Source: Selaginella moellendorffii
Taxonomy: Eukaryota; Plantae; Lycopodiophyta
Direction of reading: 5' to 3'
NCBI RefSeq assembly: GCF_000143415.4
Contig: NW_003314296.1
Location: forward strand, 787,645 to 851,644
Length of the DNA stretch: 64,000 bases
Of the stretch, positions 59,487 through 64,000 are shown piece after piece. Every line of letters begins with the position of its first letter. The stretch's first letter is position 1. The translations under genes were made by a program, and so were the position numbers. The notes under the pieces are model-generated. The model saw only the letters and a list, made by a program, of their open reading frames with translations, had not been told where the DNA came from and ran no database searches.

Positions 59487-62090
59487 CTAGAACACCGTAA
59501 GATGTTTCTCTTTCCGGATTGAAGCGTAGATGTTTGATAGAAGGACGTAAACTCCAGAGCCCTCGGGATCCAGTGCTAGTGCCTGTTTTGCAGCGCTAGC
59601 TCCTCGCTGGAAATCGCCTTGAGTTTTGCAAGCTCCCAATAAAGTCGTCCACACGGTGGTATTCGGTCGATACGGCATGCTCGAGACGAGCTCCTCGGCA
59701 AAGTGGAGCTGCTTGGATCGACCCAAGAGATCGACAATGCAGCAGTAGTGATCGATCGAGGGGCGCAGCTCCAAATCTCTGGTGATGAAAAAGAAGAGCT
59801 CGCGAGCTTCGTGCAAGAGCCCCGAGTGACTACACCCGGTGAGAATGGCCACGAGAGTCACCTCGTTTGGCTTCACTCCTTCCAGGAGCATCGCCCGTAC
59901 AAGCTCCAGGGATTCGGGAATATACCCGGCCTGGGCGTACGCTCCAATGGTGGCGCTCCACGACACCACGTTCCGGGCGGGCATATTCTTGAAGAGGTGC
60001 CTTGCCACGTGTGCGTGGCCGGCCTGGGCGTGGGCCGTGATCATCGAGTTGAGCGCCACGAGGCTGTGGTGGGGCATCTTTTCCAACACTACCATGGCCT
60101 CGTCCACGTGGAAATTCCCGGCCAATGCCTGGGCGAGAACGTTCCACGTCACCACGTCGCGCTGGTCCATGGAATCGAACACGTGGCGGGCGTCCATGGG
60201 CCGGCTGTTGCTCCCATACGCCTGGATCATGGAGTTGTACGACGCGGCGTTGGACAGTGGCATGGCGTGGAAGATGCCGATCGCATTTTCTAGATGCCCT
60301 TGTGCGGCATTTGCTGCGAGGACGGTGTTCCAGGACACGGCATTCCACCGGGGCATATTCCTGAAGACTTGACTTGCAGATGCGGCACCTAAGGCGGTCA
60401 TAGTTATGTTCCAAGAGGCGATGCTCTTGTACGGCATGGAATCAAAAGCGGCCTTTGCTTGTACGTCATGCCCCTCCCGGGAATATGCCGTGAGAATCAC
60501 ATTGCAGCAGATGGAGTTTCTGAAAGGAATCAGCCGAAATGCCATTTCCGCTCTGTGAAGATACCCATTCTCTGCGAAGGCCTGGATTAACACGGTCCAC
60601 GAAACCACGTCCTTTTCGGGAATCTTTGCGAACACTCTCTCGCACATACCAAGATTCCCACTCCCGGCATATGCTCCAATAACGGCTACCCACGTCCAGG
60701 AATCCCACTGTGGCATACGATCGAATATCCGGCACGCGTAGCATAGTTTCTCCTCGCTTGCGTACGCTTCGATCAGGGCATTGGCGGAAATAACATTTCG
60801 AGCCGATGACAAGTCAAACAGCTCTTTCGCTTTCTCCAGATACCCCTCTTGGGCATTTGCTTGCACGATGATATTCCAGGCAACAACATTCCACGCCGGC
60901 ATTTTCTGGAAAAATTGCGTCGTCGATTCCAGATTGCCTGTCTCCGCAAAAGCGGCGATCATAACCGTCCATGTGAAAACGTTTCTGACGGGCGTGTTCC
61001 GGAACAGAACCTCGCACTCGTGAAGAAGCCGGCACTCGGCATAGCTCTTGATTAGCGACGTATTATCATCCTCGCCGCCACCTTTTCTCCGTACGAGGCT
61101 TTCCACCGCCATCGGGCCTTCGTTTCCCGGCTCCAGAAGCTGCCCGTACGTACGGCGGGCCTCAATCAAGCATCCACTCTGTGCCATTGCGGCAATTATC
61201 GTATTCCAGGACACATTATCCCAGTACGGCATCTTCCAAAACACAAACTTGGCTTCGCCAACCTCGTCGCAGGCGTCGAGCATCGCGTTCCACAAACGCA
61301 CAGTCCGTGCCGGGACGGAATCAAACACAGACAAAGCTAACGCAAGATGCCCGCTTTCGGCATACGCGGTGAGCATGATCGTCCAGGACACGACATTATG
61401 CTGCGGCATCACTTGCAAGATCAAGCAGGCTGTGGTGACGTCCCCGTGCGATGCAAATCCATTCAGCATAGTGTTCCAGCAGTAGTCGTTTCTTTGCGGC
61501 ATGGCGCTGAAGAGATTCTTCGCATCCTCCAAATGCCCGCAAAGAGCATTTGCCTGAAGCATGCTTGTCCACGATACCACGTCCGGATTTTCAATCGCGT
61601 CAAATACAATTCGCGCCTGGGAAACATCACCAGTTCTACCGTACAGATTGAGCATCGCGTTCATCGACGCAGTGTCTTTCTCAGGCATGGAACCGTACAG
61701 GTTCTCGGCCTCGGCAAAATGCCCTTCCTCGGCAAGTGCCAGGATCACAACGGTGGCCGCCACGGATCCCACCTGCGGCATGCGAGAGAAGAAGAATCGA
61801 GCATCGCCCAGATGCCCGTGATGGGCGAACGCCGCGACGATGATGTTCCAGGAGAAAACATTGCGGCACTCGGCGGCATGGAAGACCTGGAGCGATCGAT
61901 CCAGGCGGCCACACTTGGAGTACATGTCGACGAGGAGATTAGAGAGGAAGACATTGCTGGCGTGGGAGGAGGCGAGGATCTGGGCGTGGACGAACTCGCC
62001 CTTGTGAGGATCGAGCGAGTCGCGGCACTGCTTGATCGCTCTCGCAAAGCGCGATACTTCTTGCTTAGATCTACTCAAGGTCACAAACAT
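59487..62090 (-). CDS. PLS-class PPR protein dominated by short tandem repeats, E domain, no DYW
   Basis: Many ~31-aa WN/WT..AxAxxG..A...F..MP repeats, HYCCIVDLLGRS, WTTLLGACK, GVYVLLSNIYA. Confidence 0.92.
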   Translation of the reverse strand: MFVTLSRSKQEVSRFARAIKQCRDSLDPHKGEFVHAQILASSHASNVFLSNLLVDMYSKCGRLDRSLQVFHAAECRNVFSWNIIVAAFAHHGHLGDARFFFSRMPQVGSVAATVVILALAEEGHFAEAENLYGSMPEKDTASMNAMLNLYGRTGDVSQARIVFDAIENPDVVSWTSMLQANALCGHLEDAKNLFSAMPQRNDYCWNTMLNGFASHGDVTTACLILQVMPQHNVVSWTIMLTAYAESGHLALALSVFDSVPARTVRLWNAMLDACDEVGEAKFVFWKMPYWDNVSWNTIIAAMAQSGCLIEARRTYGQLLEPGNEGPMAVESLVRRKGGGEDDNTSLIKSYAECRLLHECEVLFRNTPVRNVFTWTVMIAAFAETGNLESTTQFFQKMPAWNVVAWNIIVQANAQEGYLEKAKELFDLSSARNVISANALIEAYASEEKLCYACRIFDRMPQWDSWTWVAVIGAYAGSGNLGMCERVFAKIPEKDVVSWTVLIQAFAENGYLHRAEMAFRLIPFRNSICCNVILTAYSREGHDVQAKAAFDSMPYKSIASWNITMTALGAASASQVFRNMPRWNAVSWNTVLAANAAQGHLENAIGIFHAMPLSNAASYNSMIQAYGSNSRPMDARHVFDSMDQRDVVTWNVLAQALAGNFHVDEAMVVLEKMPHHSLVALNSMITAHAQAGHAHVARHLFKNMPARNVVSWSATIGAYAQAGYIPESLELVRAMLLEGVKPNEVTLVAILTGCSHSGLLHEARELFFFITRDLELRPSIDHYCCIVDLLGRSKQLHFAEELVSSMPYRPNTTVWTTLLGACKTQGDFQRGASAAKQALALDPEGSGVYVLLSNIYASIRKEKHLTVF

Positions 62091-62163: not shown

Positions 62164-63177
62164 TCATGGAATGTAGATCTTGTCCCCGGGATAGATCCTA
62201 TCGGGATCGCTGGTAACGCTCATGTTGGCTTCGAAAACATCGTCCGGGGACAATCCATACTTGTTCGCGATAGAACTCATCGTATCACCTTCTTTCACCT
62301 GGAGAGGAAGAGCTCAAGCTCACGAAGAAAACGATGTATAGGATACGAACCTCGTGATACTTGGACTTTTGTTTCTGGTGGCTCGTCCAGGCGAAAACTG
62401 AGAGGAGGATCGTCGCGGCGGCAGTAGCAGCGACGACGAAGTATTTGCTTCGTCCCGTGTTCTTGGCTTGATCTTTCTTTTTGGAGCGATGATCGTCGTC
62501 CTGTGGCACGATCCCGTCTTGATCGTCATCTTCGCGCGACAAAGACGAGGTGGAGGACGAAAGCTCCGAGTTTGCATCGCCATTTAGGAGATGGTGGTGA
62601 GCGCTGGGAATGGAGGCACCGTTCTCTCGCTTGACGTCACTGATCTCTGAAAAGAGAAGAAGAAAAATCTAGAAAACCATCGTTTTTGGCTTTGCCATGG
62701 AGCAAACCTTTGAGAAACCGAAGAACTAGACATATTTGTCCAACATCTCTTCCGGAAGGATCTTTCAGTGTGACCCACTGAACCGCGGTCCCGATCGAGA
62801 TTAGATCACGGATGGGAACGAGAGATTTTCCCACTGGATGGCTGGAGTGATCATCCAGAAGTGTCACCTATGAAGATCAAGGAGATAGAAACACGAATAA
62901 AAGGAGAAGAAGAGAACTTGTTACCGTGAGGCAAGAGTCCTCCGACGCCACATCCAGTCTAAACTCTGCTAGCCATTTGGAACTTAAGTTCTTGAGCGGC
63001 GCCGTTCTAGCCTAGAGAAAGAAATCCATCATCCAAAACTCTAGAGACGGATAAAAATAACCAGCATTTTACCTGTTCTTTGCCGATCTGTAGCAAAACA
63101 GAGGGCCGCGCATCGATCTTGACAGAGAGATTCCTTCCCTCCACCACGGATATATGAAGGTGCCCCAAGCACCGCAT
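62164..63177 (-). CDS. C2 domain - transmembrane - LysM protein (260 aa, 5 exons)
   Basis: Exons 63177-63073, 63011-62925, 62867-62708, 62646-62351, 62298-62164, all GT-AG and in frame. C2 (LHISVVEGRNL...WLAEFRL...VQWVTLKD), TM FVVAATAAATILLSVFAW, LysM YHEVKEGDTMSSIANKYGLS...N...PDRIYPGDKIYIP. Confidence 0.85.
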
Positions 63178-64000
63178 TTTCTTCGCGATGGAACGAGCCC
63201 TAAAACTGCCAGAGGCACTACAAGGACATTAACGGTCCAGATCTCGCCACGGCGAAGGAGTCCAACGGTATGGTTTTAAAGTTCTTTGATATATCTTTCT
63301 AATAATACTAAAATAATATGTGGTCAAAACTTTTGTTTATCTATGTGGTATAGTAATTGATATATTTATTTTTTCAATTAATATAAGCATTATTAAGGTA
63401 TTAATGAAAATGTATGACCTGTTTTAGTTCTTGTGGTGCCTGTCTAGAAGCATAGCATGGACATCTCAAATTAGTATAGAACATGACAAATTATTATTAT
63501 TATTTTGTTTAAGCTCTCTTTCTTCATTTGATAATGATGTATAATCTAAAATCCATTTTCTATTTATAAAAGGGTACTATTGTATGTTTTTGGCAGAATT
63601 GCACTATAGCCAAGTTGCCATCGCTGACATAATGTTAGTAATGCTATGTCCTACAGTCATGACATTATATCATCACCACAACACAACCAAGACCAAATCC
63701 ATATACTCCCCCTGATACCCCTTTTATTGTTACCTGGCCTTGCCAAGTTATCACTGAGGGCCTGCAAAGTAAATGCTAAAGCTAGAGTAACACCAAAACC
63801 ATCAACACTCTCTTTTATAAGTTTGGTGTGCTAAGATATGGTTTAATACTAATCTTATTTTTAAGATGAACTTTGCTATTTGTTTGGTTAGCAAGAGCTG
63901 GAGTATTTTCTTTTTTAGTGATAGACATGTGGATCAATGTATTTCAATTTCTTTCTGAATTGTGCTCTATAGTTTAAGCAAAAATGTTGGTTTTAATGTT

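What the first reader, a model, noticed from the sequence alone, without database searches (positions are those of the whole stretch)
62164..63177. Unusual C2-TM-LysM protein: a kinase-free membrane protein linking a glycan-binding LysM to a lipid-binding C2 domain
Seen: five GT-AG exons with 52-61 bp introns splice in frame into 260 aa comprising an N-terminal C2 domain, an acidic/basic linker, one TM helix and a canonical-looking C-terminal LysM (Y-x-x-V-x-x-GDT...IA-x-KYG...N...P-x-x-I-x-PG-x-x-I-x-IP). The ORF track misses the LysM exon. Established: LysM binds GlcNAc polymers (chitin, peptidoglycan); known plant LysM classes are RLKs, GPI-anchored proteins, secreted proteins and F-box fusions; large PMI1-related proteins use an NT-type C2. 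I do not recognise this small C2+TM+LysM layout. Inference: no signal peptide and a basic stretch before the TM suggest type-II topology, with C2 cytosolic and LysM outside or in a lumen. It could be a chitin/peptidoglycan sensor, or, since non-seed plants retain plastid peptidoglycan synthesis genes, an envelope tether contacting plastid peptidoglycan. The C2 keeps only some Ca2+-ligand Asp residues.
Basis: partly seen in the sequence, partly recalled or inferred. Interest (0 to 1): 0.85.

Follow-up and report, generated by a model that had tools for sequence, protein, structure and literature searches.

The report
Selaginella homologue of eyespot protein MIN1
The five-exon gene is real and encodes a C2 / transmembrane / LysM membrane protein. 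The layout is not new: the gene is already annotated in Selaginella, the architecture was catalogued in 2009, and it matches the Chlamydomonas chloroplast-organising protein MIN1 described in 2008.

Summary
Observation confirmed. Five GT-AG exons on the minus strand (63177-62164; introns 61/57/61/52 nt) splice to 260 aa. The product is identical to GenBank EFJ21212.1 (SELMODRAFT_443644) of Selaginella moellendorffii. Pfam on the full-length allele finds C2 (30.9 bits) and LysM (47.3 bits). AlphaFold and Foldseek give a classical C2 sandwich and a beta-alpha-alpha-beta LysM, joined by a disordered linker and a 21-aa hydrophobic segment.

The claim of novelty fails. Zhang et al. 2009 list 'C2+LysM' as an architecture lost in angiosperms. 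Their supplement prints a Chlamydomonas member (cr156645) that carries the same motifs. Chlamydomonas MIN1 is described as a C2/LysM eyespot protein postulated to attach chloroplast envelope to plasma membrane.

Homologues with the same layout occur in Mesostigma, Chlorokybus, Klebsormidium, Coleochaete and Spirogloea. A liverwort copy has lost its LysM.

Best reading: a MIN1-family, tail-anchor-like protein. Its C2 is cytosolic and probably Ca2+-independent. Its LysM sits against the far face of the membrane. It most likely organises chloroplast-envelope/plasma-membrane apposition and is not an immune receptor.

The plastid-peptidoglycan idea is weakened because Chlamydomonas keeps the LysM but lacks most Mur genes. 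Location, topology and ligand are untested. Moderate-low interest.

The parts
63073..63177 (-). Exon 1 (aa 1-35): start codon and C2 strands beta1-beta3. There is no signal or transit peptide.
   Evidence: splice model; AF2 strands 5-15, 26-31, 34-37; the spliced product equals EFJ21212.1.
63012..63072 (-). Intron 1, 61 nt, GT-AG, phase 0.
62925..63011 (-). Exon 2 (aa 36-64): C2 strands beta4-beta5, including the family motif ..SKWLAEFRL..
62868..62924 (-). Intron 2, 57 nt, GT-AG, with in-frame stops.
62708..62867 (-). Exon 3 (aa 65-117 plus the first base of codon 118): C2 strands beta5-beta8, including the motif GQICLVLRF.
   Evidence: This piece alone recovered the family in an exhaustive HMMER search.
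62647..62707 (-). Intron 3, 61 nt, GT-AG, phase 1.
62444..62646 (-). Exon 4, first part (aa 118-185): Ser/Asp-rich then Lys/Arg-rich linker, predicted disordered.
   Evidence: pLDDT below 50; length and sequence vary across the family.
62381..62443 (-). Exon 4, transmembrane segment (aa 186-206, YFVVAATAAATILLSVFAWTS).
   Evidence: Kyte-Doolittle 19-mer mean 1.96. A 19-22 aa hydrophobic segment sits at this position in every family member.
62351..62380 (-). Exon 4, end (aa 207-216, HQKQKSKYHE): short basic juxtamembrane spacer and the first LysM strand.
   Evidence: a basic C-terminal flank is conserved in all members; strand 213-216.
62299..62350 (-). Intron 4, 52 nt, GT-AG, phase 0. Reading through it shifts the frame and ends the ORF before the LysM.
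   Evidence: The same intron position (..HYE|V..) is seen in the orthologue on L003.
62164..62298 (-). Exon 5 (aa 217-260 plus stop): the rest of the LysM domain. The protein ends at the last LysM strand.
   Evidence: LysM 46.2 bits on this exon alone; helices 223-229 and 234-240, strand 256-259; best solved relatives are the LysM of E. coli Kbp/YgaU, SafA and MltD.

Best explanation
The locus is the Selaginella moellendorffii member of the green-lineage MIN1 family. These are single-pass, tail-anchor-like membrane proteins built as N-terminal C2, disordered linker, one transmembrane helix, a basic spacer of 6-8 residues, and a C-terminal LysM. SHOWN here: the gene model, both domains and their folds, and conservation of the whole layout from Mesostigma/Chlorokybus to a lycophyte. 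INFERRED: the C2 faces the cytosol, because there is no signal or transit peptide and the C2 starts at residue 5. The LysM is therefore on the far side of the membrane and pressed against it. The C2 works without the canonical Ca2+ cluster. By analogy with Chlamydomonas MIN1, the protein most likely helps hold the chloroplast envelope against the plasma membrane, or organises that interface. One end (TM + LysM) would be fixed in one of the two membranes and the C2 would bind the lipid surface of the facing membrane. Loss of MIN1 gives a miniature eyespot whose pigment layers are no longer apposed to envelope and plasma membrane. In this reading the protein is not a kinase-less chitin/peptidoglycan immune receptor. 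Which membrane holds the anchor, and what the LysM binds, remain open.
For: Gene model and identity to the annotated protein. Domains: Pfam C2 30.9 bits and LysM 47.3 bits. Fold: AF2 pLDDT about 85-95 for aa 1-118 and 84-91 for aa 211-260; Foldseek gives classical C2 domains (Munc13 C2B, plant SYT1/E-Syt C2A, CAR4, dysferlin C2A) at TM-score 0.75-0.79. Family: the same C2-linker-TM-LysM layout occurs in Coleochaete (a transcript-derived ORF), Chlorokybus, Mesostigma, Klebsormidium, Spirogloea x3, a continuous 333-aa ORF on an environmental contig, and an unannotated five-exon orthologue on L003 with the same last intron position. The tree roughly follows the species tree. Link to MIN1: Zhang 2009 lists C2+LysM, also in Chlamydomonas. 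Their supplement prints cr156645 (322 aa, flagged c2), which shares the family motifs in C2, TM, basic spacer and LysM. [quoted passage not shown] Topology and targeting: there is no N-terminal extension in most members. The TMD is 19-22 aa, is 42-58% Gly/Ala/Ser/Thr, and is followed by a basic cluster in every member. From general knowledge, that fits organelle outer-membrane or endomembrane anchors better than plasma-membrane anchors. Ca2+ site: the loop-1 'DPY' Asp is Arg in Selaginella and Calypogeia and Ala in Spirogloea, and the loop-3 D-x-D is not conserved. Exons differ between the two haplotypes at 3 of 783 nt (1 non-synonymous), against 5 of 231 nt in introns and 101 of 600 nt upstream.
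Against: Selaginella and most streptophyte carriers have no eyespot, so the Chlamydomonas phenotype cannot transfer literally. Boyd et al. 2011 found that EYE2-ChR1 co-positioning persists in min1 cells and that acetate rescues the phenotype, so even in Chlamydomonas the simple tether model is unproven. The identity of cr156645 with MIN1 was not verified by accession. Its similarity to the Selaginella protein was judged by eye only, because the sequence has no reference usable in the tools. The primary MIN1 paper is not held. AF2 did not model the hydrophobic segment as a confident helix (pLDDT below 50). There are no localisation, topology, lipid-binding or glycan-binding data for any streptophyte member. 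No moss, fern or seed-plant member was found, but the searches had limited sensitivity.
Confidence: 0.5

Rival explanations
1. A plastid outer-envelope protein whose LysM sits in the intermembrane space and binds the plastid peptidoglycan layer, coupling it to a cytosolic C2. This is compatible with the tether model, with peptidoglycan as the LysM ligand.
For: Selaginella has MurA-G and PBP (Table S5 of PMC4815162). All streptophyte carriers found belong to lineages reported to keep plastid peptidoglycan. The architecture is reported lost in angiosperms. There is a precedent: the 'peptidase_M23+LysM' architecture from the same 'lost' list is DipM, a plastid peptidoglycan hydrolase of the intermembrane space in moss. 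PPASP (TM+LysM) was proposed as an outer-envelope peptidoglycan binder on phylogenetic profile. The moderately hydrophobic TMD with a conserved basic C-flank resembles organelle outer-membrane tail-anchor signals (general knowledge).
Against: Chlamydomonas keeps a family member with an intact LysM but lacks MurA-D, MurF, MraY and PBP. The liverwort Calypogeia keeps C2+TM with no detectable LysM exon. No member was detected in the model bryophytes that have plastid peptidoglycan, although sensitivity was limited. This gene is not one of the Selaginella PPASP genes (438100/438219). About 54 residues, including a folded LysM, would have to cross the outer envelope after translation.
Confidence: 0.2
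2. A plasma-membrane type-II, kinase-less receptor or decoy whose extracellular LysM senses chitin or bacterial peptidoglycan fragments, with the C2 relaying to the inner leaflet.
For: The LysM is canonical (47 bits) and weakly resembles the LysM3 of LYK4/5 (21-24 bits, below cut-off). Plant LysM proteins are best known as GlcNAc-ligand receptors (PMC2728734).
Against: There is a single LysM only 6-8 residues from the membrane, no signal peptide and no kinase or GPI anchor. The TMD is 19-21 aa and Gly/Ala-rich, which is short for a plasma-membrane anchor (general knowledge). The family predates land plants and occurs in unicellular algae. The one genetically studied member affects organelle organisation, not immunity. 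The nearest solved LysM is that of Kbp/YgaU, which from my own knowledge is a cytoplasmic K+-binding protein, so a LysM of this subtype need not bind wall glycans.
Confidence: 0.12
3. An annotation artefact or decaying gene: the LysM exon is not really joined, or the locus is a pseudogene.
For: No Selaginella transcript evidence could be examined here. The exact protein is on record only from the genome assembly.
Against: All four introns are canonical and the frame is kept. Both haplotypes keep the ORF with one conservative change. The same exon junction occurs in L003. The fused layout is present in a Coleochaete transcriptome ORF and in an uninterrupted environmental ORF. Both domains fold confidently.
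Confidence: 0.03

Closest known systems
Chlamydomonas reinhardtii MIN1 (Mittelmeier et al. 2008, Eukaryot Cell 7:2100; cited in PMC3276157 and PMC3084665)
   Same: It is described as a C2/LysM-domain protein. The Chlamydomonas C2+LysM protein printed in Zhang 2009 (cr156645, 322 aa) has an N-terminal C2 starting at about residue 5, a Pro/Ala/Ser-rich linker, a Gly-rich TM, an RKR spacer and a terminal LysM. Shared motifs include ..CLVLRF....YYEV..DTLC....YPGD...
   Different: Selaginella has no eyespot. Its linker is shorter (260 vs 322 aa). The Selaginella LysM lacks the two Cys residues seen in the algal members, and its C2 loop-1 Asp is Arg. Homology was judged by eye, and the identity cr156645 = MIN1 was not checked by accession.
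'C2+LysM' architecture class of Zhang, Cannon & Stacey 2009 (BMC Evol Biol 9:183)
   Same: The same two-domain combination, reported in green algae and 'mosses', including Chlamydomonas, and reported as lost in angiosperms.
   Different: The paper only catalogues the architecture. The Selaginella protein itself was not found in its sequence supplement by motif search.
[quoted passage not shown] 2016)
   Same: One TM helix next to one C-terminal LysM, no transit peptide, streptophyte distribution, and a proposed envelope location.
   Different: PPASP has the TM at its N-terminus and no C2. The Selaginella PPASP genes are 438100/438219, not this gene. Relatedness of the two TM-LysM modules could not be tested.
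Plant LysM classes LYK, LYP, LysMe and LysMn/F-box-LysM
   Same: They share a Pfam LysM domain.
   Different: The gene here has no signal peptide, one LysM where LYK/LYP carry up to three, no kinase, no GPI anchor and no F-box. Its LysM is C-terminal to the TM.
C2 proteins anchored by one TM (plant SYT1/E-Syt, MCTP, ferlins)
   Same: A classical C2 fold (TM-score 0.71-0.79 to SYT1 C2A, MCTP2 C2 and dysferlin C2A) on the cytosolic side of a single-pass anchor. These are membrane-tethering proteins (PMC6680132 for MCTPs).
   Different: This protein has a single C2, no SMP domain, a degenerate Ca2+ site, and a lectin-type domain on the far side of the membrane.
E. coli Kbp/YgaU LysM
   Same: It is the best solved-structure sequence match to the TM-proximal LysM (E = 2.4e-05 to 2.5e-05). 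It shares the ..F/Y-x-V-K-x-GDT..N......PD+IYPG... pattern.
   Different: Kbp is a soluble bacterial BON+LysM protein with no C2 and no TM.

Membership tests
MIN1 family (C2-TM-LysM) | N-terminal classical C2 domain with no preceding targeting peptide | tested here: met
   Pfam PF00168 at 30.9 bits against a 22-bit cut-off. AF2 gives an eight-strand sandwich from residue 5. Foldseek TM-score is 0.75-0.79 to C2 domains.
MIN1 family (C2-TM-LysM) | Single transmembrane segment between the two domains | tested here: met
   Hydrophobic 21-mer at aa 186-206, mean hydropathy 1.96, conserved in position in all 11 aligned members. AF2 confidence is low there.
MIN1 family (C2-TM-LysM) | C-terminal LysM immediately after the TM | tested here: met
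   Pfam LysM at 47.3 bits, aa 215-260. The spacer is 6-8 residues and the protein ends with the LysM.
MIN1 family (C2-TM-LysM) | Sequence homology to Chlamydomonas MIN1 over both domains | tested here: inconclusive
   Only a by-eye comparison was made with cr156645 as printed in the Zhang 2009 supplement. That sequence has no reference, so it was not put through alignment tools. The identity cr156645 = MIN1 was not verified.
MIN1 family (C2-TM-LysM) | Role in organising the chloroplast envelope / plasma membrane interface | not testable with these tools
   This needs localisation and mutants. It is reported only for Chlamydomonas.
Ca2+-dependent (synaptotagmin-type) C2 | Five acidic Ca2+ ligands in loops 1 and 3 (D..DPY; D-x-D......D) | tested here: not met
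   In alignment A2, the loop-1 'DPY' Asp is R24 in Selaginella. Loop 3 reads LDDHSSH with no D-x-D and no distal Asp. Only D22, D69 and D70 lie in the top loops. Mapping used the general C2 pattern, not a structural superposition.
NT-type C2 (PMI1-like) | Match to the NT-C2 family and not to classical C2 | tested here: not met
   The Pfam hit is PF00168, with no NT-C2 hit at E of 1 or below. The structural neighbours are classical C2 domains.
PPASP | Small protein with an N-terminal TM helix followed by LysM; the listed Selaginella genes are 438100/438219 | tested here: not met
   Here the TM is at aa 186-206, behind a C2 and linker, and the gene IDs differ.
LysM receptor kinases / LYP / LysMe | Signal peptide, extracellular LysM(s) N-terminal to a TM or GPI anchor, with or without a kinase | tested here: not met
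   There is no N-terminal hydrophobic segment, a single C-terminal LysM, and no kinase hit.
Strict tail-anchored proteins | TMD within about 30-40 residues of the C-terminus | tested here: not met
   54 residues follow the TMD, and 50-73 do in LysM-bearing relatives. The protein is therefore only 'tail-anchor-like'.

The most novel reading that the evidence does not exclude
The MIN1 family may be an ancient Viridiplantae device that pins a large parietal chloroplast to the cell cortex. The eyespot role in Chlamydomonas would be one specialisation of it. The LysM may read a GlcNAc-containing glycan of the envelope intermembrane space: true peptidoglycan in streptophytes, and a remnant or other glycan in Chlamydomonas. 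In Chlamydomonas, EYE2 (LysM + TM + thioredoxin) and LMR1 (two LysM domains) are also at the chloroplast envelope. The family's retention in Selaginella and streptophyte algae, and its loss or decay in other land plants, would then track cells with one or a few chloroplasts and/or a plastid wall. That would make a vascular-plant gene a handle on how the plastid wall or envelope is coupled to the cytoplasm.
Probability: 0.2. Interest if true: 0.6.

Novelty: new member of a known kind. Interest (0 to 1): 0.3.

Why it matters
For genome annotation, the 'hypothetical protein / LysM domain-containing protein' SELMODRAFT_443644 and its allele 444228 can be labelled MIN1-like. The 'novel architecture' flag should be dropped.

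Biologically, one question remains. A protein known only from the algal eyespot is conserved, with its whole layout, in eyespot-less streptophyte algae and in a vascular plant. Yet it appears absent from angiosperms. This suggests an older and more general job at the chloroplast surface. That job is testable by localisation, lipid and glycan binding, and cross-species complementation of min1. No function has been shown in any streptophyte.

Tried and rejected
1. Pfam on single C2 exons gave no hit. The C2 only scores when spliced, so an exon-wise scan understates it.

An exhaustive HMMER search with the 53-aa exon-3 piece recovered the allele P0001. The cluster look-up then gave P0021, the exact product.

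3. The search for homologous proteins was used three times.
   - With P0001 it gave only Klebsormidium and one metagenome protein.
   - With alignment A1 it added Spirogloea but was capped at 8000 candidates.
   - With the Coleochaete C2 region 1-125 it returned only itself, which was unproductive.
   Absence from mosses, ferns and seed plants is therefore not established by my searches.

4. The long repetitive hits P0002-4, 9, 12 and 16-18 were not followed up. They match only 20-34 residues of the 53-residue query. All but P0016 match in three or more stretches, so they are probably repeat-driven.

5. A LysM exon was sought in Calypogeia L002 by tblastn at E of 10 or below. None was found within the gene or 4 kb downstream.

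6. The environmental fragments P0005, P0006, P0008, P0011 and P0014 could not be assigned to species.

7. The primary MIN1 paper (PMC2593190 / PMID 18849467) and my guess at the PMC id for the eyespot proteome paper (PMC1533972) were not available. A search for '156645' with MIN1 found nothing.

8. LEFT OUT: aligning or scoring the Chlamydomonas cr156645 sequence. It is printed only in a paper supplement and has no reference, so it was compared by eye only.

9. Relatedness of the TM-LysM module to PPASP could not be tested, because no PPASP sequence was in hand and the searches were exhausted.

10. The window is Selaginella.
Full report
**1. What is in the sequence**

The feature lies on the minus strand. 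Five exons join in frame:

| Exon | Window coordinates |
|---|---|
| 1 | 63177-63073 |
| 2 | 63011-62925 |
| 3 | 62867-62708 |
| 4 | 62646-62351 |
| 5 | 62298-62164 (stop included) |

The four introns are 61, 57, 61 and 52 nt. All are GT-AG, have pyrimidine-rich 3' ends, and are less GC-rich than the exons. The spliced CDS is 783 nt and encodes 260 aa. Reading through intron 4 shifts the frame and terminates before the LysM. That is why the ORF list shows an 85-aa ORF and a separate 44-aa LysM ORF.

I looked up the neighbouring intronless PPR ORF (59487-62090, minus strand). This places the window on Selaginella moellendorffii scaffold GL377600.1 of assembly GCA_000143415.2. The deposited gene model at exactly this position gives a 260-aa product with C2 and LysM on record. 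The spliced translation is identical to P0021 = EFJ21212.1, SELMODRAFT_443644, UniRef D8S365 'LysM domain-containing protein'. The other haplotype carries EFJ19342.1, which differs by D121N.

**2. Domains and fold**

- Exon 5 alone hits Pfam LysM at 46.2 bits. The three C2 exons give nothing when scanned one at a time.
- Pfam was run on the full-length allele P0001 (D121N). It gives LysM 47.3 bits (aa 215-260) and C2 30.9 bits against a 22-bit cut-off (aa 5-98).
- AlphaFold2 on an 11-sequence family alignment predicts an eight-stranded sandwich for aa 5-117 (pLDDT about 85-95). It predicts a beta-alpha-alpha-beta LysM for aa 213-259 (pLDDT 84-91). Everything between is low-confidence.
- Foldseek against the PDB returns only classical C2 domains at the top: Trichomonas C2 proteins, Munc13-1 C2B, plant SYT1/E-Syt C2A, CAR4, dysferlin C2A and PLD-alpha. 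TM-scores normalised to the target are mostly 0.7-0.79 for single-domain chains. This is not the NT-type C2 of PMI1.
- By sequence, the nearest solved LysM is that of E. coli Kbp/YgaU, then SafA and MltD.
- The hydrophobic segment is aa 186-206. It is preceded by RSKKKDQAKNTGRSK and followed by HQKQKSK, after which the first LysM strand begins.

**3. The family**

It found the Selaginella allele and also:

- Coleochaete scutata, 369 aa, from a Trinity transcript ORF
- Chlorokybus, 275 aa
- Mesostigma, 244 aa, N-terminally truncated
- Calypogeia fissa, 330/333 aa
- several short environmental fragments

Word-indexed searches added Klebsormidium nitens GAQ82174.1 (336 aa), a 333-aa environmental protein encoded as one uninterrupted ORF, and three Spirogloea muscicola paralogues.

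All of these except Calypogeia show the same order:

1. C2 starting at about residue 5
2. a variable Pro/Ala/Ser-rich linker
3. a 19-22 aa Gly/Ala-rich hydrophobic segment
4. a short basic spacer
5. a LysM that ends the protein, with family motifs such as CLVLR(Y/F) and DPDRIYPGD

An unannotated contig from a sequencing run of an unknown plant (L003) carries all five exons, with the last intron at the same ..HYE|V.. position. Calypogeia keeps C2 and TM, but no LysM exon is detectable in the gene or within 4 kb downstream.

A maximum-likelihood tree is broadly congruent with the species tree. Chlorokybus + Mesostigma has support 99/98 and Selaginella + Calypogeia 80/89. Long branches call for caution.

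Between the two Selaginella haplotypes the exons differ at 3 of 783 nt, the introns at 5 of 231 nt, and the upstream 600 nt at 101 positions. This is weakly consistent with constraint on the coding sequence.

**4. It is a known architecture**

[quoted passage not shown] They also state that C2+LysM is present in Chlamydomonas.
- Their sequence supplement prints the Chlamydomonas protein cr156645 (322 aa, flagged 'c2', LysM at 277-322).
- By eye, cr156645 shares the family's C2 motifs (..VSVIEARNV....LAPKFLKD.RLAVP....GTIVHWFSLK....ELCLVLRFL..). It also has a Gly-rich TM, an RKR spacer, and a LysM reading ..YYEV.EDDTLCHIASCF....NPNRLYPGDRL...
[quoted passage not shown] - min1 mutants have a miniature eyespot. 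Its pigment granules are disorganised and not apposed to the membranes during photoautotrophic growth, and ChR1 and EYE2 levels are reduced (PMC3276157, PMC3084665).
- The primary paper is not held. From memory, and unverified here, its abstract describes an N-terminal C2 and a C-terminal LysM separated by a transmembrane sequence. It also reports that the isolated C2 associated with the chloroplast envelope in moss cells.
- I could not verify by accession that cr156645 is MIN1. I did not put that sequence through any tool because it has no reference.

**5. How it most likely works**

Shown: the domains, the fold, and the conserved order of parts.

Inferred topology: there is no signal or transit peptide, and a folded C2 starts at residue 5. 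The N-terminus therefore stays in the cytosol, and the single TM puts the LysM on the other side, only 6-8 residues from the bilayer.

Inferred targeting: the conserved targeting-like feature is not an N-flank charge cluster, which varies between members. It is a moderately hydrophobic, 19-22 aa TMD that is 42-58% Gly/Ala/Ser/Thr, followed by a basic cluster in every member. From general knowledge, this resembles organelle outer-membrane or endomembrane anchors more than plasma-membrane ones. With 54 residues after the TMD, the protein is only 'tail-anchor-like'.

Inferred Ca2+ independence: the canonical Ca2+ cluster is degenerate. The loop-1 Asp is Arg in Selaginella and Calypogeia and Ala in Spirogloea, and the loop-3 D-x-D is not conserved. 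Lipid or protein binding by the C2 is therefore probably Ca2+-independent in these lineages.

Combined with the Chlamydomonas genetics, the best-supported mechanism is organisation or tethering of the chloroplast-envelope/plasma-membrane interface. The TM-LysM end would be fixed in one membrane and the C2 would engage the opposing one. Confidence is high (about 0.85) that this is a MIN1-family member. It is moderate (about 0.4) for the tether mechanism. Even in Chlamydomonas, EYE2-ChR1 co-positioning survives loss of MIN1, and acetate rescues the phenotype.

**6. The peptidoglycan idea**

In favour:
- Selaginella has MurA-G and PBP.
- DipM, the 'peptidase_M23+LysM' architecture from the same 'lost' list, is a plastid peptidoglycan hydrolase acting in the intermembrane space.
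- PPASP, a TM+LysM protein, was proposed as an outer-envelope peptidoglycan binder on phylogenetic profile.

Against:
- This gene is not one of the Selaginella PPASP genes.
- Chlamydomonas keeps a family member with an intact LysM while MurA-D, MurF, MraY and PBP are 'not found'.
- Calypogeia appears to have lost the LysM.

I rate this reading at 0.2. It could still be true for streptophytes as a lineage-specific ligand.

A plasma-membrane chitin/peptidoglycan sensor (0.12) has no positive support beyond the presence of a LysM. An annotation artefact is very unlikely (0.03).

**7. Verdict**

This is a new, already annotated but unnamed, member of a known kind. Residual interest lies in what a MIN1-type protein does in organisms without eyespots, and in why it is kept in a lycophyte and in streptophyte algae but is reported lost from angiosperms.

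Noticed in passing
window 59487-62090 (-): An intronless 867-aa PPR-type ORF lies on the same strand. Its ATG is only 73 nt downstream of the C2-LysM stop codon, so the 3' UTR of one gene must abut or overlap the 5' region of the next. On the other haplotype, two overlapping gene models (867 aa and at least 712 aa) are on record.
   Followed up: partly
window 63280-64000: The AT-rich stretch upstream of the gene is very divergent between the two Selaginella haplotypes. There are 101 differences, including indels, in the 600 nt upstream of the ATG, against 3 in 783 exonic nt. It could be a promoter with insertions or a transposon remnant.
   Followed up: partly
L002:4001-6665 (Calypogeia fissa CBCUJL010000054.1): The liverwort homologue keeps C2, linker and TM, with a 40-aa N-terminal extension. 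It ends 21 residues after the TM, and no LysM exon was found by tblastn within 4 kb downstream. This is an apparent domain loss within the family.
   Followed up: partly
L003:1619-4202 (Logan SRR22405887 contig, unknown plant): An unannotated five-exon orthologue with larger introns. Gene callers cut it into small ORFs. Its last intron is at the same ..HYE|V.. position as in Selaginella. A retrotransposon gag fragment lies nearby.
   Followed up: partly
P0026, P0027 (Spirogloea muscicola), alignment A2 columns about 131-175: Two of the three Spirogloea gene models carry a Pro-rich insertion in the middle of the C2 and lose the precomputed C2 hit. This looks like an unspliced intron in the models.
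   Followed up: no
Zhang 2009 supplement 3 (PpLysMn5, Physcomitrella): A moss 'LysMn' protein has a TM segment and a C-terminal LysM with the motif NPDLIYPGDKL, resembling this family's DPDRIYPGDK. It has no evident C2. It may be a C2-less relative or an unrelated convergence.
   Followed up: no
Literature: Chlamydomonas EYE2 and LMR1: Two further Chlamydomonas LysM proteins are reported at the chloroplast envelope: EYE2 (LysM + TM + thioredoxin, the 'LysM+thioredoxin' architecture) and LMR1 (two LysM domains). Chlamydomonas lacks a peptidoglycan pathway. This hints at an unknown LysM ligand or partner at the envelope.
   Followed up: no
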